Below are positions 30,088-42,872 of a stretch of 64,000 nt of DNA, piece by piece; position 1 is the first letter of the stretch, and every line of letters starts with the position of its first letter. The notes under the pieces are model-generated. The model did not search any database and had not been told where the DNA came from. It worked only from the letters and a program-made list of their open reading frames with translations. Made by a program: the position numbers and the translations under genes. The DNA comes from Hypanus sabinus (Eukaryota): assembly GCF_030144855.1 (NCBI RefSeq), contig NC_082710.1:154132001-154196000 (forward strand), written 5' to 3'.

Positions 30088-30413
30088 CTGGGGGAAGGGA
30101 GATGGGTGAGTCTAGGGACAGAGACACCCCCAGCCGGAGACAGAGACATATCACACACACACAGATCAATAAAGACCACCCAATCCTCTCTCTTCAGGAT
30201 ACTGTAACGCACACACAACTGCTCCCAGAACCCACACCCTCACATACCTCTCACTCCCTCCTTGCCCACACCTTCTTCCTAACTGCCCCCAATCACCTCT
30301 TCAACCTCCCCCACCCCCCCACCCCCGTATTCAGTACAACCCACCATCCTCATCAGCAATGTTCAGTTCCCTACCCCAATATCCTGGAATCACGACCTCT
30401 CCCCACCACTCAC

Positions 30414-30686
30414 CCACTCGTAGTTGCCTCTTTCCGTAAGCCAGGAATTTCCTCAGCCACTGGACACAGTCCTCCTTCAGGAAGTACTTCCATTTCTGAA
30501 TGTTGACCTTGTCCTGATCCCAGTGGTGTTTAATCCTCTCTGCCCACATTGCAAATGTGTCCCACTCCATCTGGTCCTCGTCCAGGCTCAGCAGGTCCTC
30601 CCCATCCCAGCTGTACCGGGTGAAGCCTCTCGTGGTCCCATCCGCCCTCAGGTCACAGCCAATCTCCTGCTGGAGTGTGTGGATTT
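30414..30686 (-). CDS. MHC class I-like gene A, alpha2 exon (273 bp): EIHTLQQEIGCDLRADGTTRGFTRYSWDGEDLLSLDEDQMEWDTFAMWAERIKHHWDQDKVNIQKWKYFLKEDCVQWLRKFLAYGKRQLRV
   Basis: tgacag|AA ... GTG G|gtgagt; HTLQxxxGC, DGED and CxxWLxKF motifs; C101 and C164 both present. Confidence 0.95.
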
Positions 30687-32633
30687 CTGTCAACAACATA
30701 AGCAGTCGGCAAATGTTTAACGAAACTCATTCTGTGTTCAAAGAAGCACACCTGTCCAGTCAAAGGACCCTTAAATAAATGAGACCATCTGTATGGAGTC
30801 ACAGAGCAAGAATAAGGCCTTTCAGCCCACATCATCTAAGCTGATGATCAGGTACTCAGCCCGTTTCAGTTCAAGTTTATTTTACCCAGGGTATCAACGC
30901 CATGAAAGGTACTTTGTGCAGCAGGAGCACAGCACATGAAAAACACAACAGGGATAGTTTAACATATACTTGAATTAACATAAATTATGCACGACTTAAA
31001 CACAAGGACGCTAGTACAAGCTGATGGAGTAAAGAAATACAGTCCTCGTGTAGGTGTCCTCAGTGGTGGGGAGGGCCGTACCTGTGACAGAACTGGCCGA
31101 GTTCACCTCTCTCTGCATCCTCTTGTGTTCCTGTGTACCGGAGTTCTTTCATACCAGGCAGTATTGCTTTCCACTGTACGTCTGTGGAGGTTTGTCAGAG
31201 TCTTTGGTGATGTGCAGCATCACCTAAACTTCTAAGACAGGAGGGACACTGGCATGCTTTCATTCACGGTTGCATCTATGTGCTGACGTCAGGATAGACC
31301 CTCTGAGATGTTGCTTCAATGACCCTTCACCGTAAACCTCTCAGTGAGGACTGGTGTGTTCCCAGTACTTGGTCCATGACTGCCTCTGCCTTACAATTCA
31401 AGTGCTCATCCAGAGAATTAATGTTGTGGACAGCTAATTAACCTATAAACTGCATGTCTAAAGTAAATTAATCCCCTCTGCCTTCACAACAACCAAATCC
31501 TCCAATTCCCTGCACAATCACGTACCTATGAAGAGTCTCTTTAGCAGCTCCAATATTTCTGCCTCCATCACCACTGCAGGCGGTGCTTTTCAGGCACCTA
31601 CCCCTCACCATGCACATCGCCTTTCAACTTACCCCTCTCACCTGGTATGCATGCTTTTTGACCCTGAGAGCAAGATGCTGTCTCTCCATTTATACCTCTT
31701 ATACATAATCTTACAAACATACGGTAAATCGGCTTCCCTCTGCCTCTGCTGTCCAGCGAAAACCACCCAAGTTTCTCTCACCTTTCCCTACAGCATGTGC
31801 CCTCTAATCCAGGCGGCATTGTGGCAAACATCTTCAGCACCATCTGCAGAGTCTTCATATCCTTACTACAACAGAGTGACTGCAACTGAATCTCCTGTAA
31901 TTTCCGCTGCCCCAATTTCATACTCTCCTGCAGGGTCTACACTTGTCCTTATCTACAGCCGTCTTAAAACTTAAGGAACAGTGATCTCCATTGCTTAAAC
32001 GTTTTCCCACTGAAAGGTCAGTCACCTGACCAGGCTGATTTTGCAGCTCCGGGTGCCATATATTTGCTCCTTTAGGTGGACTATTTATACACTGACTTAA
32101 GTGTATAAATAGACCAGACTATGCAACAGTTTCGTCCCCCAAGTTATCAGACTCCTCAATACCCGAAGCCTGGACTGACACCTTGCCCTGTTGTCCTGTT
32201 TATTATTTATTGTAATGCCTGCACTGTTTTTGTGCACTTTACACAGTCCAGTGTAAGTCTGTAGTCTAGTGTAGCTTTCTGTGTGTTGTTGTATCTTTTT
32301 TATTACATAGTTCAGTCTAATTTTTTGTACTGTGTCATGTAACACCATGTTCCTGAAAAACGTTGTCTCATTTTTACTATGTACTGTACCAGCAGTTATG
32401 TTCGAAATGACAATAAGAGTTGACTTGACTTGACTTGAACCCATCCCCAGTTGTACCAAACAAATAAACCTCATGCATTGCGGAGGTCCCTGTCTATATA
32501 GAGAAAACTGAAGTAACCCACAACATCAAACCTTTTGTTTTCCCATCTGCCTGCACGCCTGTTTCTCAATAGCTATTGAGGAGTCATCCCATTAGGTTGC
32601 TCGCACTTTCTCATTTTGAGTTTTAATCCTGTA

Positions 32634-34525: not shown

Positions 34526-37340
34526 ATCCTGTAAAGATTCACGTACTGATGCATGCTCCATAATCTTACCAGTAATATTCCTGGCGCTAAAGTAAACACA
34601 TTTCCACCCATTCATTCCATCGTGTCTATTACCTTGCTCTGGAATTACCCCCCCCACCACCCACAGAGAAACAGTTTAAATCTTCCCGAGTAACAATACC
34701 AAGCTTCCCAGCCAGGCTATTGGCTCCCTTCCAGATAAAATGCAACCTTCCCTCTTGAAAAGATCACCTCTGCCACAGATGCTCCAAGTATCTAGGAACT
34801 TGAAATGGTTGACAAACAGCAGTGGATCCAGAACCAGCGTCCATAGGCCTTCAATCTGAGTAATAATCCTCTATTACCACCCTCTGACTATTTAAACTAA
34901 GCCATTTGTACATTTATTTGGCTTGCTCCCATTGAATCCCATGTGATCTAACCTTCCACAGAAGCCACCATGCAGAGGTGTCAAAGATTCAAATATATAC
35001 AATATACACAGTCACAGGACTTAATAAGCAATAAGCTCTAAAACCTTAGCCTCAATACCTCCTTGGGCAACTAGATCCTCAATTACCTCATTTGCTGACA
35101 CCAGTCTTTTAAAAAAATATATACTTTATTCAAAAATAAAATTATATACAATAAACCATTCAATGACTCTCAATCCTTTACAAATGGTTCCATTACAGTC
35201 TTTACATTTCCCCACTTTTCGCCACCCCTGTGGCAGTCTGTTATTCCATATTTACATACCCTTTTTGAGGGGTATACACCCCGCCCCCCCTACCCCTTAC
35301 ACTCCCACGGGAGAAGGACCCTAGACTGTGGTCCTTCCCCACCGGGCCCTTGCGGTGGCTGCACCGAGTTTGAGTGCGTCCCTCAGCACGTACTCCTGCA
35401 GCCGGGAATGTGCCAGTCGGCAGCATTCCCCCACGGACATCTCCATGTGCTGGTAGACCATCAAGTTTCGGGCCGACCAAAGAGCATCTTTCACCGAGTT
35501 GATGATCTGCCAGCAGCACCGGATGTTGGTCTCGGTGTGCGTCCCTGGGAACAGCCCATAGGTCAGAGAGTCCTCTGTTACGCAGCTGCTGGGGATGAAC
35601 CTCGACACTGTCCCTTCCATCCTCCTCCACACCTTCTCGGTGAACCCACAGTGTGCAAAGAGGTGGGTCACTGACTCCTCCTCACTGCAGTCCTCCCGTG
35701 GGCAGAGGGGTGTGGAGACGACGTTCTGGACGTACAGGAGGGATCGGACTGGGAGGGCCCCTCTCACCACCAGCCAGGCGAGGTCTTGGTGCCTGTTGGT
35801 GAGGTCTGGCGATGAGGTATTTTGCCAGACGAACTGGACAGTCTGCTCAGGGAACCTCCCCACTGTGTCCATCTCATCCTTCTCCTGCAGTGCCTGCAGG
35901 ACCTTACGTGCTGACCACTGCCTGATGGCCCTGTGGTCAAAGGTGTTGACCTGAAAGAACTTCTCTACGAAGGACAGGTATGGCGGCAACGACCATCTGA
36001 CAGGAGGTGTTGCACGGTAAAGGGGCCAGACCCATCCTCCGTAGCCAGGGCGGCAGGTAGAAACTGGGCACGTAGTGGTACTTGGTGCCCACATACCTGG
36101 GATCCACACACAACCTGATGCAGCCACACACGAAGCTGGCCATCAGGGTGAGGGCGACATTGGCGACATTGGGAACGTTTTTGACCCCGTTGTCCAGGGA
36201 CTTGTGCATGGTGGTCCGTCTGACCTGCTCCATCTTGATCCCCAGACGAATCTGAAGATGGCTCGGGTGATTTCCGAGCTGAAGGAGCGGGGGACTGGCC
36301 ACACATGCACCAAGTACAGCAGCCCTGAGAGCACCTCACACCTGTTGACCAGGTTCTTGCCCGCTATCGACAGGGAGCGCCCTTCCCCACAGTCCCAGTA
36401 TCTTTTTGACCTTGGCAGTCCGCTCCTGCCAGTTCTTGTTGCACGCCTCGGCCCCTCCGAACCAGATCCCCAACACCCCCTGGTGATCAGCCCTGATGGT
36501 GAAGGGGACGCTGGATCGGTCGGGCCAGTTGCCGAAGAGCATGGCTTCGCTCTTCGTGTGGTTGACCCTGGCCCCCGACGCCTGCTCGAACTGTTGGCAG
36601 ATGCCGATCAGCCTGCGAACTGACCTCGGATCGGAGCAGAAGACGGTGACATCGTCCATGTACAGGGAGGTTTTGACTTGGGTCCCTCCACTACCTGGCA
36701 GCGTCACCCCTCTTATGCCCCCATCCCTCCTGATGGCTTCGGCAAAGGGTTCTATGCAGCACACGAACAAGACGGGAGAGAGGGCAGCCCTGCCTGGCTC
36801 CAGACCTGATGGGGAAGCTGTCTGTTTCCCACCCGTTGACCTGGACTGCGCTACAGATGTCTGTGTAGAGCAGTTTGATCCAATTCCGGATTCCCTCCCC
36901 AAATCCCATTTTGGAGAGTACATCCGCCATGTACGTGTGCGATATCCCGTCGAAGGCTTTCTCCTGGTCCAAGCTGACCAGGCAGGCGTCCACCCCCGTC
37001 CTGCACGTAGGCGATGGTGTCCCTCAGCAGCGCGAGGCTGTCTGAGATCTTCCTGCCCGGTACAGCACAGGTTTGGTCCGGGTGGATCACCTGCTCCAGT
37101 GCAGACTTGACCCTATTGGCGAGAGCCTTGGACAGGATCTTGTAGTCCACATTCAGGAGTGAGATGGGCCTCCAATTCCTAATGTCTTCCCTCTCCCCCT
37201 TCTGCTTGTAGATGAGGGTGATGATGCCCTTCCTCATGGACTCTGACATGCTGCCTGCCAGGAGCGTAGCGTTGTTCACTTCCAGCAGGTCGGGGCCCAT
37301 CCGGTTCCACAGAGCCAAATACAACCCGACCGGTAAGCCG

Positions 37341-37598
37341 TCGCTTCCGGGAGTCCTACCCGACTCAAAGGAACGGACGGAGCCAGTCAGCCCGCCCAGG
37401 GTCAGTGACTGCTCCAGACTCTCCCATCGCTTCCGGGAGTCCTACCCGACTCAAAGGAACGGACAGAGCCAGTCAGCCCGTCCAGGGTCAGCGGCTGCTC
37501 CAGACTCTCCCGTCGCTTCCGGGAGTCCTACCCGACTCAAAGGAACGGACGGAGCCAGTCAGCCCGTCCAGGGTCAGCGGCTGCTCCAGACTCTCCCG
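37341..37598. repeat. 3 x 86-bp tandem duplication inside Tx1 ORF2
   Basis: TCGCTTCCGGGAGTCCTACCCGACTC recurs at 37341, 37427 and 37513. Confidence 0.92.
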
Positions 37599-39046
37599 CT
37601 TGCCGTCGTCTAAGGCCTGCGTGATAGATGACGGGAAGCTGCGGGAGGCCGTGGTGTCTGTGGCCTTTTCTCCATACAGACCGGCATAGAAGGACCTGCA
37701 GATCCTCAGTATGTCTGTCTGCGAGGAGCGACTGAGCCGTCCTCTTCCTTAAGGTTGTGGATCACAGAGCCCCCCCCTGTGCACCTTTTGGGAGAAGAAT
37801 CGTGAGCACGTCTCGTCCTGCTCCACGGTTTGGACCCTCGATCGGAAGATGATCTTGGGGGATTCGGCGGCAAAGTGCTGGGCCTGCCGGCCCCTCACCT
37901 CCCGCAGTTCCTCCCTGACATCCACCCCCCTCGACTGCAGGAGGAGGAGTTGCTGCAACTCTGTCTGGAGTTTACGCAGTTCCCTCTGCCCCGCCTTGCT
38001 CTCTGGATGCCCTTGTGGATGAAGAACCTCTTGATGTTCTCCTTGGTGGCTTCCCACCAGTGAACCAGGGAATCAAAGAAGGCTTTCAAGGTTCTGCAAC
38101 CCGTGTACTCCTTCTCTAGTTCCTCGATGTTCTCTGGGGTCAGCAGCTTGATGTTCAGCTTCCACGTCCCCCTCCCTGCCTTCCGGTCCTCCCGCAGGTG
38201 ACAGGTGGCTCGCAGGAGGCAGTGGTCAGAGAGGACCACCGGCGTGACGTCGGTGGTTCTGACCGTGAGGGGCTCCGACAGGAAGAGGAAGTCGATCCGG
38301 GAACGGGCTGAGCCGTCCGGTCGTGTCCAGGTGGCTTGCGGCTGAGCTGCCCCTGTGGGGTCGCCAAAGGCGTCGCGCAGCCTGGCCATCTTCACCGTAT
38401 CCATCAGGAGTCTGGACGTACTGTCCAGCCACCGGATCGTCCAGCCGCATCAATGGTGCAGTTGAAGTCTCTGGCCGGGCCGTCACCAGCAGCGGTGGGA
38501 GCCGCTCGCTCCGCACAGGGGAGGCATACACGTTGATCAGCCGGAGCGGAGTGCCCCGGTATTTGACGTCTGTTACCAGGCGGCGCCCCGCAACCACCTC
38601 TTTGACTTGGGTGATTGAGGAGTTGCCTCCCCGTAGCAGAATCCCCAGGCCGGAATCACGACAGTCGTTGCCCCCCGACCACACTGACAAACCCCGGGTC
38701 CACCTCCGGTAGTTGTGGAGGTGTGGCAGTCCGCACTCCTGGAGGAAGGTCACATCGGCCTTTAACGAGTCCAAGTACTGGAGCGTGCTGACGCATCGCC
38801 CGGTACTCTTCAAACCGTGCACATTAACAGATGCCAGTGAAATGTCCACCATGATTTAAAGTTCTTTATTGCAACTGGTCACCGTCCTTACCTTCGCAGT
38901 CCTGAGTCTTCATGCCCACCGCCTTTGTGGCCAGCAGACTTTCTCCACTCTCTCTCCTCTCCGCTGGCTTTGTCCGCTGCTTCCTCTGCTGGGGCTGCTG
39001 CTGGCCTCCTCCAACACATTCCTCCTGAGAAGTGGACAGGTTACCG

Positions 39047-39420
39047 GAGGCCGCGTGGTCCCCTGCCCTTCTCTTCACGTGCTCCTTCCTCGTCTGTTGT
39101 AGACAGGTTGCTGCAGGCCGCATGGTCCCCTGCCTTTCTCTTCCCATGCTCCTCCCTCGTCTGTTGTAGACAGGTTGCTGCAGGCCGCGTGGTCCCCTGC
39201 CTTTCTCTTCCCATGCTCCTCCCTCGTCTGTTGTAGACAGGTTGCTGCAGGCCGCGTGGTCCCCTGCCTTTCTCTTCATGCGCTCCTCCCTCGTCTGTTG
39301 TAGACAGGTTGCTGCAGGCCGCGTGGTCCCCTGCCTTTCTCTTCCCATGCTCCTCCCTCGTCTGTTGTAGACAGGTTGCTGCAGGCCGCGTGGTCCCCTG
39401 CCTTTCTCTTCACGTGCTCC
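39047..39420. repeat. About 5.5 x 67-bp tandem repeat inside Tx1 ORF1
   Basis: CGTCTGTTGTAGACAGG recurs at 39091, 39158, 39225, 39292 and 39359. Confidence 0.92.
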
Positions 39421-40550
39421 TTCTGCTCCGCCCTCTCTCGTTTGGCTGAAGCTTTTTGGGCCTTCTTCCATTTGCCCACGACGCTCCAGCCTTCCTCCCC
39501 CTCGGCTCTCCCCTCCTCCATGGACTCCTCCTCCTTTCCTGTGGCGGGTCCTGGAGGGTCTGCGAGGGGGTGGGGGCCCTCGACGTGGTTGCGCCTTCTT
39601 CCCTGCTGGCGTCTTCCGTCATTTCAGGTGCCGCCTCTGCAGGGTGGCGGGTATATCCGATCCTGCCGGGGCCCTTTCAGTGCCAGCACCTCCCCTGGTC
39701 GCCTGTGTGTAGGTGCCGGCACATCTTGGACAGGCCCTGTACAGGTGGTCTCCCTGTCTGCAGAGATTGCAGGACTTGTCCTGCGTGCAGTCCTTGGTGA
39801 GGTGGCCTTCCACCTTACAGTTCCTGCAGATGACCGCCCTGCACTGGGCCGCGATGTGCCCCGCCTTGCCGCAGTTGCGGCAGACCCTGGGCTGCCCGGC
39901 GTAGAGCAGGTAGCCTCGCTTCCCTCCGATGGCGAAGACTGAGCAGCCATTAGAGTCCACCCTCAGCTTCACCTTGACCTGCCGCTTGCTGGTTCAGAAC
40001 CCCAGGCTGTCCTTCACGTCCAGACAAGCTCCTACGCTCTCCACATACCGCGCGAGGAATGTAAGAACATCGGCCACCGGCACGTACGGGTTGAACATGT
40101 GCACGGTGGCGGTCCGTTCCTGCTGGGCGGCAGCGAAGAGGGGCTGTGCTTGTAGCAGCGACAGTGGCGCCTCTCTCCCCTTCTCCTGGAATTGCTGGAG
40201 CAGTTTCTGCCACCCTGCGGGTCGTCGGAAGGTGACGCCGAAGAACCCAGCAAAGCCCTGGACGCAGTAGATGTCGTCAACTGTAAATCCACAGCAGTCC
40301 ATGAAAACCTTCTGGATGAAGGTCAGTCTCATGAATTCTTTGCCCTCGCTCTGGCGTCGCACTGTCAGCCGGACAGTGTTCTTGATGCCTAGGCCTCGGG
40401 CCGATGCGCTGTTATCTTCAGCCATCCTCTCTACCGCTGTCGTCGTAGCTGGAAAGGGGTCTAAGATTGGGAGCTGATCAGCATCAGGATCCACCCCTGT
40501 GTCAGCGCAAAACCTTCTCTGCCTTCCGATCGTCGTGTGTCCCAAAGGAA

Positions 40551-40575
40551 ACTACACTTGATCTCAGCCAAAAGG
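40551..40575 (-). ncRNA. U2 snRNA fragment (nt 13-37), not a functional gene
   Basis: Minus strand CCTTTTGGCTGAGATCAAGTGTAGT versus recalled vertebrate U2 CCTTTTGGCTAAGATCAAGTGTAGT (24/25). Confidence 0.88.
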
Positions 40576-42338
40576 TGACACCAGTTAGTTTGGAGTGATG
40601 AAAACATCTCTTCCACAATGACCGTCAGCACAGGTGCACCAGGCTGTGTGTGTCGCCCCCGATCTACTCACTTGACACTTATGGTGGGGAGGCTAAACAC
40701 AGCTCCAAAGCCATTATTGAAGTTTGCTGGTGACACCACAGTCACTGGCCAAACCAGAGGAGGTGATGAGTCATCATATAGGATGGAGGCTGAAAATCTG
40801 GCCGGGGTGCCACTAACACCACCTCTCACTCAATGTCAGCAAGACCAAAGAGCTGATTATTGGCTTCAGCAGGAGGAAACCAGAGATCCGTGAGCCAGTC
40901 TTCATTGGGGGATCAGAAGGAGAGGGTCAGCAACTTTTAATCCCTCAGTGTTATCATTTCATAGGATCGGTCTTGGGCCCAGCAGGTAAGTGTAATTATG
41001 AAGAAAGCACACTTCGAAGTTTGTGAAGATTCAGCATGGCATCTAAAACCTTAACCAACTTCCATAAATGTGTGGCGGAGAGTATATTGACTGGTATAGA
41101 AACACCAATGCCCTTGAATGGAAAGCCCTATAGAAAATAGCGGATACAGTCCATCATGGGTAAAGCCCTCCCCGCAAATGAGCACATCTACACAGAGTGT
41201 TCTTGTAGGAAAGCAGCTTCCATCATCAAGAAACCTCCCACACCCCAAATGGCCATGCTCTCTTCTACTGCTGCAATTGGGAAGAAGGGTCTGGAGCCTC
41301 AGGACCCAAAACACTATGTTCTCAAACAGCTATTACCCATCAGCCATCAGGTTCTTTAACAAGAGGGGATAATTTCACTTGACCCATCACTGAACTCTTC
41401 CCACAAACTGTAGACTTACTTTCAAGGACATATGGCAATGTACAGGTACTTTGATAATAAATGGAGTTTAAACTTTGAAATTTAAAGTACATGATGACAA
41501 CATCTACCACCCTGCACTTATCAATCCTCTTCAGAAATTAATATCTGTGAAGCATGATTTTCCACACACACATGTCCATATAAATTACCATTTATCAGTC
41601 TTTATCTTTCCAAATCCTGGTAGAAACCTCATTTGCGTTATGTCTACCGGCACCTTCCTTGTTGTAATGTGGATATGTTACACCATTGCTCTTTTCCCTT
41701 CACTTCTCAACTTCCAAAACCTTCTCCACAAATACAGTTGAAAATTATTCATTTAGCACCTTGTCTGCCTCCTGTGGCACCTCCAAATGGTGACCACACT
41801 GATCCTAAAGGGGACGATACTGTCCTTGGTCGGCCTTTTGCTCTTTTACTTCTGGAATCACAGTAGATTATCTCTACTTGTGGTGTCACTCAGCTGCCGA
41901 AGGAGAACTCGAGACACATTCACTTCCACTCTGAATACTTACACAAGTACACATCTTGATATTCAATATTAGTCACTCTATCATTTTTGGGGGAGGGTAC
42001 ACAATCAATCCAAGGGCCTGTGTCCAATGAAACAGTCCCACAACACTTGGTTCAAGTGGACCACCGTGAGCGGCATTGCACAGTAAATGTGAGCAAGTGA
42101 TGGCATTATGCTCACTCTGAATAATTTTATGAATAAGGTTTAATTTTGAAATTAAAACCAAGGTGTCTGCAGAAATGAGGCATTTGGTGCAAGTTCTTGC
42201 CCATCATTCCTCCACGTTTGAAGCACTGACCACTTAAATCTAATCACTGGGAAACGTGGGTTGACCGATTTGATGAAAGTATTCAACCCCAATTTATACA
42301 AGTCGTACTGAAATGAAATTTGTCAGATAGGGACTCAC

Positions 42339-42593
42339 CACTCAATTGATCGGTCGTAGACATTATGAAGAGAATAAGTTTTTTCTGGGCCCTCTCCCAC
42401 TCCGCAGCAAGTGACTTCTTCTTCAGCCACGTGGCCCCCTCGCTCTTCACCATCCACGGCTCTTGGGGAACCAACCTCCGATGACTGTCGTACACCACAA
42501 ACTGGACACCATCCACGCTGGTGACAGCCACTAACTGTGGGAAGTTGGGAATCTTAGTTGTGGAAGTCAGGCAAATCCGGAGAGAGTGCGATT
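42339..42593 (-). CDS. MHC class I-like gene A, alpha1 exon (255 bp): ESHSLRICLTSTTKIPNFPQLVAVTSVDGVQFVVYDSHRRLVPQEPWMVKSEGATWLKKKSLAAEWERAQKKLILFIMSTTDQLS
   Basis: tttcag|AA ... AGT G|gtgagt; class I motifs SHSLR, VDGxQFxxYDS and PxxPW. Confidence 0.92.
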
Positions 42594-42872
42594 CTGAAAC
42601 AAAGAGAGGGGGGAAGCCAGGGACAAAACAAAGCAACCTGTCGCAGCCGATACGACGCGGAGACCAAGTCACAGGCTGGTTCCTTTATCCCCGTCTGCTG
42701 TTTAACACATGGAAAGTAGTCAGCGATCTCCATGGTCTCGCCAGAAGCCCTGCCCAAAGTGGGGCATAACATCACAATGAGGAACGTGGGTCAGTGGGGC
42801 AATGACACAGCCTTGTCCAACGTTGGTCCTCACAGAGGTTGCTGCTGGTCAGGGATGCACATGCACCCCTCC

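What the first reader, a model, noticed from the sequence alone, without database searches (positions are those of the whole stretch)
35096..40585. Keno-like Tx1 retrotransposon carrying a U2 snRNA head, inserted outside any U2 gene
Seen: a 5470-bp ORF1/ORF2 element flanked by a perfect 10-bp TSD (TGACACCAGT, 35096-35105 and 40576-40585). Its very first 25 nt inside the TSD are U2 snRNA nt 13-37 (24/25), ending at GTGTAGT within the branch-point recognition sequence; no downstream U2 sequence follows the 3' end. Known: Keno elements of the Tx1 clade insert site-specifically into U2 genes at about this position. Inference: a master copy inside a U2 gene was transcribed from the U2 promoter and retrotransposed as a U2-LINE chimera to a non-target site. 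This would represent escape from target specificity, or a family with a permanently captured snRNA head and a possible route to snRNA-headed SINEs.
Basis: partly seen in the sequence, partly recalled or inferred. Interest (0 to 1): 0.8.

Follow-up and report, generated by a model that had tools for sequence, protein, structure and literature searches.

The report
U2-headed Keno-like LINE family copy
This is an old, dead copy of a common stingray jumping gene (a LINE) whose RNA always starts with the first ~40 letters of the splicing RNA U2; the same arrangement was already described in crocodiles, so it is a new example rather than a new kind.

Summary
A 5,470-bp non-LTR retrotransposon lies on the minus strand at 35106-40575. 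It is flanked by a perfect 10-bp duplication and begins with U2 snRNA nt 13-37 (24/25), extending to nt 40 (26/28).

It is not a one-off chimera:
- The genome is a 4.04-Gb batoid. It holds at least 1,800 candidate 3' ends and dozens of 5' ends of this family.
- 29 of the 32 other 5' ends read carry the same U2 head joined to the same body. 22 of the 30 headed copies start at U2 nt 1-5, with unrelated upstream flanks.
- The window copy is a decayed member that has lost 12 nt at its 5' end.

The head ends at nt 40, or nt 52 in a variant. That is where the 5' side of a Keno insertion in a U2 gene would end. Two related copies show the exact Keno 3' junction (polyA then U2 nt 39), one of them inside a real U2 gene.

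The head is therefore most likely a 5' transduction from a U2-gene-resident ancestor. It was then inherited, and re-acquired at least once (double heads exist). The family now inserts away from U2 with no detectable target preference.

U1- and U2-headed Tx1 LINEs were described in crocodilians (Kojima 2015), so this is a new member of a known kind. Other notes of this scan on this genome report the same family. No copy behind a U2 promoter and no SINE derivative were found.

The parts
35096..35105 (.). Target-site duplication, copy next to the element's 3' end (TGACACCAGT)
   Evidence: the 10-mer occurs only here and at 40576-40585
35106..40575 (-). Whole retrotransposon copy, 5,470 bp, decayed
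   Evidence: Relatives in the same genome are 81-90% identical over the first 300 nt and 90-93% over the last 300 nt
40548..40575 (-). U2 snRNA-derived head, U2 nt 13-40 (26/28). The family's full head is nt 1-40
40531..40547 (-). 17-nt linker (CTTTGGGACACACGACG) between the U2 head and the shared core, which starts ATCGGAAGG. Other subfamilies carry a different linker or U2 nt 41-52 here
39619..40545 (-). ORF1 remnants: ZCCHC3-type RNA-binding domains 1 and 2, then three CCHC zinc knuckles, in two frames
   Evidence: PF23057 E=7.8e-13, PF23058 E=2.1e-7, PF00098 E=3.2e-11
39035..39421 (.). Internal tandem repeat, 67 bp x 5.8, between ORF1 and the endonuclease region
37895..38852 (-). Endonuclease region (APE type), split by a frameshift
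   Evidence: PF03372, E=3e-4, 21.1 bits, below the Pfam cut-off of 24.5. The N-terminal piece has no hit
37338..37598 (.). Internal tandem repeat, 86 bp x 3
36336..37324 (-). Reverse transcriptase domain in two overlapping frames
   Evidence: PF00078, E=8.8e-9 and 3.2e-10
35321..36127 (-). ORF2 C-terminal region with the zf-RVT zinc-binding domain
   Evidence: PF13966, E=1e-8. Homologues across elasmobranchs
35106..35320 (-). 3' UTR with AATAAA (35125-35130 on the + strand) and a short A/T tail
40576..40585 (.). Target-site duplication, copy next to the element's 5' end

Best explanation
Window 35106-40575 (minus strand) is an old, inactive copy of an abundant elasmobranch LINE family, and it has lost 12 nt at its 5' end. 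The family has the L1/Tx1-type layout: ORF1 with RNA-binding domains plus CCHC knuckles, and ORF2 with an APE endonuclease, RT and zf-RVT. Its full-length RNA begins with nt 1-40 of U2 snRNA.

Shown: the head belongs to the family, not to this locus or to its target site.

Inferred origin:
1. An ancestor of Keno type sat in a U2 gene. Keno's 3' junction lies before U2 nt 39, and the 5' junction of such an insertion falls after nt 40 or nt 52, depending on the size of the target duplication.
2. It was transcribed from the external U2 promoter, starting at U2 +1.
3. The chimeric RNA was copied by target-primed reverse transcription into non-U2 sites, with ~10-bp duplications.
4. The headed form was then inherited, and was re-headed at least once.
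5. It spread to more than a thousand dispersed sites with no detectable target preference.

Whether today's source copies sit behind a U2 promoter or use an internal promoter is not known.
For: Anatomy and TSD.

The head is a family feature:
- The first 300 nt find at least 40 copies out of 66 candidates.
- Of 33 distinct 5' ends read, the window copy included, 30 carry the head on the same body. 22 of those start at U2 nt 1-5 with unrelated upstream flanks. 6 start at nt 13-15, as this copy does.

The family is dispersed and not U2-targeted:
- There are 1,817 first-look 3' ends. All 30 that were read end in a short polyA followed by unrelated, non-U2 DNA.
- The flanks share no common target repeat and show no likeness to U2 nt 39-52.

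Link to Keno:
- The Keno 3' flank is TCTGTTCTTATCAG..., that is U2 nt 39 onward (PMC4640811; PMC6136364).
- L084 is a real U2 gene with a homologous promoter-side flank. Its nt 39-187 are preceded by an A-rich tail and by an ORF1 fragment 76% identical to this element.
- L015/L064 lie 61 kb from the U2 tandem array, in the same orientation. They read: copy A tail, polyA, U2 nt 39-52, core of copy B. This is the structure expected from a tandem Keno insertion with a 14-bp TSD.

Recurrent, non-random head boundaries:
- nt 40 occurs with two different linkers (main type and L018).
- nt 52 occurs in L030 and in the outer head of L082.
- L082 has a second head joined exactly to nt 1 of the first.
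- Copies with U2 1-52 heads group with ordinary nt-40-headed copies in a tree of the element body (SH-aLRT 99 and 94).

Age:
- Contigs of three other coded organisms bridge the 5' junction, and one of them also bridges the 3' junction.
- No long ORF2 was seen among the 150 best RT matches.
Against: - None of the 30 sampled headed copies has a U2 promoter or spacer upstream.
- No exact canonical interrupted U2 unit was found in the two arrays. The proposed U2-resident source is therefore inferred, not seen.
- Copy A of the L015 tandem is not preceded by U2 sequence.
- Derived subfamilies share mutated heads (T34G, A38T, T39C). Either one master lived for a long time, or dispersed copies act as sources. 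The second case needs a promoter that U2 nt 1-40 is not known to supply.
- Membership of the Keno/Tx1 clade was not tested by RT phylogeny.
Confidence: 0.65

Rival explanations
1. The head arose by template switching. At the end of reverse transcription the enzyme jumped from the 5' end of the LINE RNA onto a U2 snRNA molecule, once or several times, and the product became a new source copy. This is the route Kojima (2015) favoured for the U1/U2 additions in crocodilian SINEU and Tx1-Mar.
For: - Heads were added repeatedly: double heads in L082 and L081, and U2 1-52 heads on bodies that group with ordinary nt-40-headed copies.
- No copy behind a U2 promoter was found.
- Within-head 5' ends cluster just 3' of the positions that are 2'-O-methylated in mature U2.
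- There is a precedent in PMC4494074.
Against: - The U2 part is always a 5' fragment ending at nt 40 or nt 52. It never reaches the snRNA 3' end, where jumps normally land.
- The same two boundaries recur in separate events.
- Those boundaries match the Keno target site, and real Keno-type 3' junctions exist in this genome.
Confidence: 0.25
2. A one-off chimera at this locus only: a single U2-LINE read-through or template-switch product, with no other copy carrying a U2 head.
Against: 29 other copies carry the same head on the same body, most of them longer (from nt 1).
Confidence: 0.01
3. The 25-mer belongs to the target, not to the element. On this view the LINE landed in a U2 pseudogene fragment.
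For: Keno-type elements do land in U2 sequence at about this position.
Against: - The U2 stretch lies inside the 10-bp TSD.
- No U2 sequence lies outside either end of the element.
- The same stretch is joined to the same body at dozens of unrelated loci.
Confidence: 0.01

Closest known systems
Keno (KenoDr1, KenoFr1, Keno-1_SSa): U2 snRNA gene-specific LINEs of the Tx1 clade (Kojima & Fujiwara 2004, as cited in PMC4494074, PMC4640811, PMC6136364)
   Same: - APE-type LINE with a CCHC ORF1.
- The head ends where the upstream part of a Keno-interrupted U2 gene ends.
- Related copies in this genome show the Keno 3' junction, polyA then TCTGTTCTTAT (L015, L084).
   Different: This copy, and all 30 sampled 3' ends of the family, are outside U2 genes and show no U2-like target. 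The U2 piece is carried inside the element instead of flanking it. RT-tree placement was not tested.
Tx1-Mar LINEs with snRNA heads (Tx1-11_Crp with a U2 head; Tx1-2_Crp and Tx1-4_AMi with U1 heads) and the SINEU elements of crocodilians (Kojima 2015, PMC4494074)
   Same: - A Keno-related LINE whose 5' terminus is U2-derived.
- Repeated 5' addition of snRNA pieces.
- Insertion outside snRNA genes.
- Old, inactive copies with ~10-bp TSDs.
   Different: - The host is an elasmobranch, not a crocodilian. The paper states that no SINEU was detected outside crocodilians.
- There is no preference for a Mariner-type target.
- No short SINE partner was seen.
- The head boundaries here coincide with the Keno target site, which favours read-through over the template switch proposed there.
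U6-L1 and other snRNA-L1 chimeric retrocopies of mammals (Buzdin 2002; Garcia-Perez 2007, as cited in PMC4494074)
   Same: An snRNA sequence fused 5' of LINE sequence within one TSD-flanked insert.
   Different: Those are independent dead-end events. They have a full-length snRNA and variable junctions to 5'-truncated L1. Here a fixed 5' fragment of U2 is joined at one point to the full-length element and is inherited by a whole family.
5' transduction by upstream promoters (MAST2-SVA; SINEU-2B from Mariner-N4) and co-transcription of R2 with 28S rRNA (as discussed in PMC4494074)
   Same: The proposed mechanism is the same. The element is transcribed from a host promoter upstream of its insertion site, and the upstream host sequence travels with it.
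   Different: Here the donor is a Pol II snRNA gene, and the transduced piece starts exactly at the snRNA +1. The source locus has not been found.

Membership tests
Keno (U2-specific Tx1-clade LINE) | Two-ORF LINE: ORF1 with CCHC knuckles; ORF2 with an APE-type endonuclease and RT | tested here: met
   PF23057, PF23058, PF00098, PF00078, PF13966. The endonuclease hit (PF03372) is weak: E=3e-4, below the Pfam cut-off. All reading frames are broken.
Keno (U2-specific Tx1-clade LINE) | RT domain groups with Keno inside the Tx1 clade | not testable with these tools
   No Repbase reference sequences could be reached. Named homologues are only 'uncharacterized protein' entries of elasmobranchs. A structure route failed, with pLDDT 43.5.
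Keno (U2-specific Tx1-clade LINE) | 3' end abuts U2 nt 39 (TCTGTTCTTATCAG...) | tested here: not met
   The 3' flank of the window copy is the TSD followed by unrelated DNA. 30 of 30 sampled family 3' ends are non-U2. The feature is met only by the related copies L015/L064 and L084.
Keno (U2-specific Tx1-clade LINE) | U2 nt 1 to ~38-52 lies directly upstream of the element's 5' end | tested here: met
   Present, but as an internal head inside the TSD. It is nt 13-40 in this copy, and nt 1-40 or 1-52 in relatives.
snRNA-headed Tx1 LINEs (Tx1-Mar type, Kojima 2015) | Full-length family members start with a U1- or U2-derived sequence | tested here: met
   30 of 33 distinct 5' ends carry U2 nt 1-40/52. 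22 of them start at nt 1-5.
snRNA-headed Tx1 LINEs (Tx1-Mar type, Kojima 2015) | Preferential insertion into one DNA-transposon family (Mariner-N4_AMi) | tested here: not met
   All-against-all comparison of 60 flanks shows no shared sequence at the junctions.
snRNA-headed Tx1 LINEs (Tx1-Mar type, Kojima 2015) | Companion short elements (SINEU) with the same head | tested here: inconclusive
   No further U2 heads were found in about 330 kb of held sequence. This only bounds the copy number to roughly below a few tens of thousands.
snRNA-LINE template-switch chimeras (U6-L1 type) | Independent events with variable junctions, the snRNA copied from its 3' end | tested here: not met
   One fixed junction is shared by at least 27 copies. 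The U2 part is a 5' fragment ending at nt 40 or nt 52.

The most novel reading that the evidence does not exclude
The U2 head makes the LINE RNA a substrate of the snRNA modification machinery, and the genome records this.

The eight copies (nine heads) that are truncated inside the head start at:
- nt 13-15: six copies, plus the outer head of L082 at nt 12-13;
- about nt 20: one copy;
- about nt 26: one copy.

These positions lie immediately 3' of Gm11/Gm12, Gm19 and Gm25 of vertebrate U2 (PMC7960923). That is where a reverse transcriptase stalls on 2'-O-methylated templates.

If this is real, the chimeric transcripts pass through the U2 maturation pathway. The head would then be functional, for example in nuclear routing or stability, rather than a passive passenger.

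The pattern was seen post hoc, on nine ends.
Probability: 0.15. Interest if true: 0.75.

Novelty: new member of a known kind. Interest (0 to 1): 0.45.

Why it matters
- It extends snRNA-headed LINEs from crocodilians to cartilaginous fish. The trait is therefore either ancient in the Keno lineage or arises readily.
- This genome holds the intermediate states side by side: real U2 arrays, Keno-type junctions in U2 sequence, single and double heads, and more than a thousand dispersed copies. That makes it a good place to settle how a site-specific LINE loses its target and how snRNA heads are acquired (read-through or template switch).
- For annotation, short U2-like hits in this genome are mostly LINE heads, not U2 pseudogenes.

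Tried and rejected
- **U2 promoter upstream of headed copies:** none among 30 loci. The flank of L018 is a dispersed repeat, not U2 spacer.
- **Exact canonical U2 heads with a non-U2 continuation:** only 3 + 2 hits, none in the arrays.
- **polyA + U2 nt 39-66:** one hit, L084. One pattern was mis-specified and found nothing; it carries no information.
- **Relaxed U2-like target preference:** the 3' flanks match U2 nt 39-52 no better than control positions (mean 5.4 against 5.47 of 14). A resemblance seen by eye was rejected.
- **Shared target repeat, as with Mariner in crocodiles:** none.
- **Head type against body tree:** poorly resolved, 17 changes against 20.8 when shuffled. It does not order the subfamilies.
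- **TSD of a second full-length copy (L017/L048):** not convincing.
- **Cross-species DNA:** The look-up of encoding contigs returned no DNA for the shark and ray genomes.
- **Fold of the C-terminal piece, for comparison with Xenopus Tx1:** pLDDT 43.5, unusable.
- **Expression:** only assembled contigs were available and no RNA holder, so transcript starts could not be read.
- **Other snRNA heads (U1 and others):** Rfam found none on ten loci with atypical heads or U2 junctions.
- **Sequence limits:** Both ends of other full-length copies therefore could not be paired.
Full report
**1. The observation**

The 10-mer TGACACCAGT occurs exactly twice in the window, at 35096-35105 and 40576-40585. 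The 5,470 bp between the two copies is a retrotransposon on the minus strand.

Read from 40575 downwards, it begins CCTTTTGGCTGAGATCAAGTGTAGT. This matches U2 nt 13-37 with one mismatch. It is the only such match in the window, and none of 100 shuffles gave one even with three mismatches allowed. Compared with this genome's own U2 genes, the similarity continues to nt 40 (26/28).

At the other end the element has AATAAA and a short A/T tail that abuts the TSD. No U2 sequence follows.

**2. Coding remnants**

Pfam on the open pieces gives:
- ORF1: two ZCCHC3-type RNA-binding domains and three CCHC knuckles.
- ORF2: a weak APE endonuclease hit (below the Pfam cut-off), RVT_1 in two frames, and a zf-RVT C-terminal domain.

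The frames are broken many times, and the longest open piece is 268 aa. Two internal tandem repeats are present, 67 bp x 5.8 and 86 bp x 3.

**3. The head belongs to a family**

The genome is 4.04 Gb. The best named homologue of the C-terminal piece is from Hypanus sabinus (89%). Mobula scores 80% and sharks 58-64%.

The first 300 nt of the element find at least 40 copies at 81-90% identity. The last 300 nt find 1,817 first-look candidates at 90-93% for the best ones.

I read 33 distinct 5' ends, the window copy included:
- 30 carry the U2 head on the same body.
- 22 of those start at U2 nt 1-5, many with the exact ATCGCTTCTCGG. Their upstream flanks are unrelated to each other.
- 6, the window copy among them, start at nt 13-15.
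- 2 start deeper in the head, at about nt 20 and about nt 26.
- 3 lack the head and begin at the shared core motif ATCGGAAGG.

The window copy is therefore an ordinary member that has lost 12 nt at its 5' end.

**4. The family no longer targets U2**

- All 30 sampled 3' ends finish with a short polyA followed by unrelated DNA.
- The flanks share no common target repeat.
- The first bases after the tail match U2 nt 39-52 no better than control positions.

**5. Link to Keno**

Published work places the 3' flank of Keno, and of the unrelated element Utopia, at U2 nt 39, TCTGTTCTTATCAG... (PMC4640811; PMC6136364).

This genome has two U2 tandem arrays on contig C79, at 20.21-20.26 Mb and 20.71-20.78 Mb, with a period of about 3.63 kb. 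It also has dispersed single U2 genes.

Two related copies show the Keno junction:
- **L084.** This is a dispersed-type U2 gene whose promoter-side flank is still recognisable. Its nt 39-187 are preceded by an A-rich tail and by an ORF1 fragment 76% identical to the window element.
- **L015/L064.** These lie 61 kb from the minus-strand array and in the same orientation. They read: tail of copy A, polyA, U2 nt 39-52, core of copy B. A second Keno insertion into a site with a 14-bp duplication (nt 39-52) would produce exactly this.

**6. Head variants**

- The main type is U2 1-40, then a 16-17-nt linker, then the core.
- L018 has U2 1-40 with a different 15-nt linker.
- L030 has U2 4-52 joined directly to the core.
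- L082 has an outer U2 13-52 joined exactly to nt 1 of an inner U2 head.
- In a tree of the element body, the two nt-52-headed copies group with ordinary nt-40-headed copies (SH-aLRT 99 and 94). The head was therefore replaced within the family.

The boundaries recur at nt 40 and nt 52. These are the expected 5' junctions of a Keno insertion with a 2-bp or a 14-bp target duplication.

**7. Mechanism**

This pattern favours a 5' transduction. An element sitting in a U2 gene is transcribed from the U2 promoter starting at +1. The RNA then carries the upstream U2 piece to wherever it next integrates.

Template switching onto U2 snRNA is the route preferred by Kojima (2015) for crocodilian SINEU. 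It is not excluded, but it does not explain why the U2 piece always ends at the Keno site.

**8. What is missing**

- No sampled headed copy has U2 promoter or spacer DNA upstream.
- No exact canonical interrupted U2 unit was found in the arrays.
- A 16-mer for polyA+U2(39-49) gives 21 hits against 4 for the control. Ten of them are on small unplaced scaffolds.
- Derived subfamilies share head mutations (T34G, A38T, T39C). Either one master lived for a long time, or dispersed headed copies act as sources. The data do not decide between these.

**9. Age**

- Contigs from three other coded organisms bridge the 5' junction, and one of them also bridges the 3' junction. No empty-site joint appeared. 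The insertion is therefore shared among related organisms.
- Among the 150 best genomic matches to the RT piece, the longest open frame is 807 aa. No intact ORF2 was seen.

**10. Comparison with known systems**

Kojima 2015 (PMC4494074) described crocodilian Tx1-Mar LINEs that cluster with Keno and carry U1 or U2 heads, for example Tx1-11_Crp. The same paper described SINEU elements with repeated 5' additions, and states that no SINEU was found outside crocodilians.

The present family has the same architecture in an elasmobranch. It differs in having no Mariner-type target preference and no SINE partner detected. It is a new member of a known kind.

**11. An unexplained detail**

Within-head 5' ends fall at nt 13-15 (six copies, plus the outer head of L082), about nt 20, and about nt 26. 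These positions lie just 3' of Gm11/Gm12, Gm19 and Gm25 of vertebrate U2 (PMC7960923). This could record reverse-transcriptase stalling on a modified head. It is a post hoc pattern on nine ends and needs a genome-wide census.

Noticed in passing
window 30331-30699 (-) and 42283-42672 (-): MHC class I alpha2 and alpha1 exons (PF00129, E=1.8e-21 and 5e-7). The LINE lies in the same orientation as the gene, inside the ~11.6-kb intron between them. Earlier notes of the scan treat this gene (s1-146641).
   Followed up: partly
G000 C79:20209519-20260563 (-) and C79:20710456-20779760 (+): Two inverted tandem arrays of U2 snRNA genes, at least 15 and 20 units, period ~3.63 kb. There are also dispersed single U2 genes with a different, shared promoter-side flank.
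   Followed up: partly
L084 (G000 C24:123119837-123122869), junction at locus position ~1505: A dispersed-type U2 gene has lost about 450 bp of upstream flank plus U2 nt 1-38. In their place it carries a 242-bp ORF1 fragment of a related LINE and an A-rich tail, joined exactly before U2 nt 39.
   Followed up: partly
L082 (G000 C37:37184962-37187986) and L081 (G000 C31:110655723-110658749): Copies with two U2 heads in series. In L081 a 26-bp, extremely 5'-truncated copy of the same family, with an 8-bp TSD (GTGGAGCA), sits between the outer and inner head.
   Followed up: partly
L080 (G000 C31:48003089-48006115), locus 1487-1526: An isolated U2 nt 1-40 fragment with no LINE body. It is flanked by similar short C/T-rich sequence, possibly a TSD. 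It ends at the same nt 40 boundary as the family head.
   Followed up: no
L001, L007, L010, L021, L022, L028, L082 (nt 13-15); L024 (~nt 20); L025 (~nt 26): 5' ends that fall inside the U2 head cluster just 3' of the 2'-O-methylated positions of vertebrate U2: Gm11/12, Gm19 and Gm25.
   Followed up: partly
G000 unplaced scaffolds C314, C663, C1327 (x2), C1714, C2395, C2399, C2464, C2633, C2747: Ten of the 21 exact matches to polyA+U2(39-49) lie on small unplaced scaffolds (control: 4 matches). These may be Keno-interrupted U2 units that were not assembled into chromosomes.
   Followed up: no
L002 (G000 C19:149608888-149612181): This is the closest relative of the window copy: 96% over 927 aligned columns of the body, and 92% in the RT piece. 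It lies 4.5 Mb away on the same contig. It is about 30 kb from the 49-kb satellite that note s1-195636 describes as built from pieces of this LINE with a U1-U2 head.
   Followed up: no
window 40625-41092: The DNA just upstream of the element's 5' end is itself a dispersed repeat. It is 74% identical to sequence upstream of L030 and matches several other loci. The LINE therefore landed in an older repeat.
   Followed up: no
L015B, L026, L029, L030, inner head of L082: Five copies have their non-U2, or alternative, 5' boundary at the same core motif, (G)ATCGGAAGG. This suggests that the head-less element starts there, or that a second transcription start or truncation hot spot exists.
   Followed up: no
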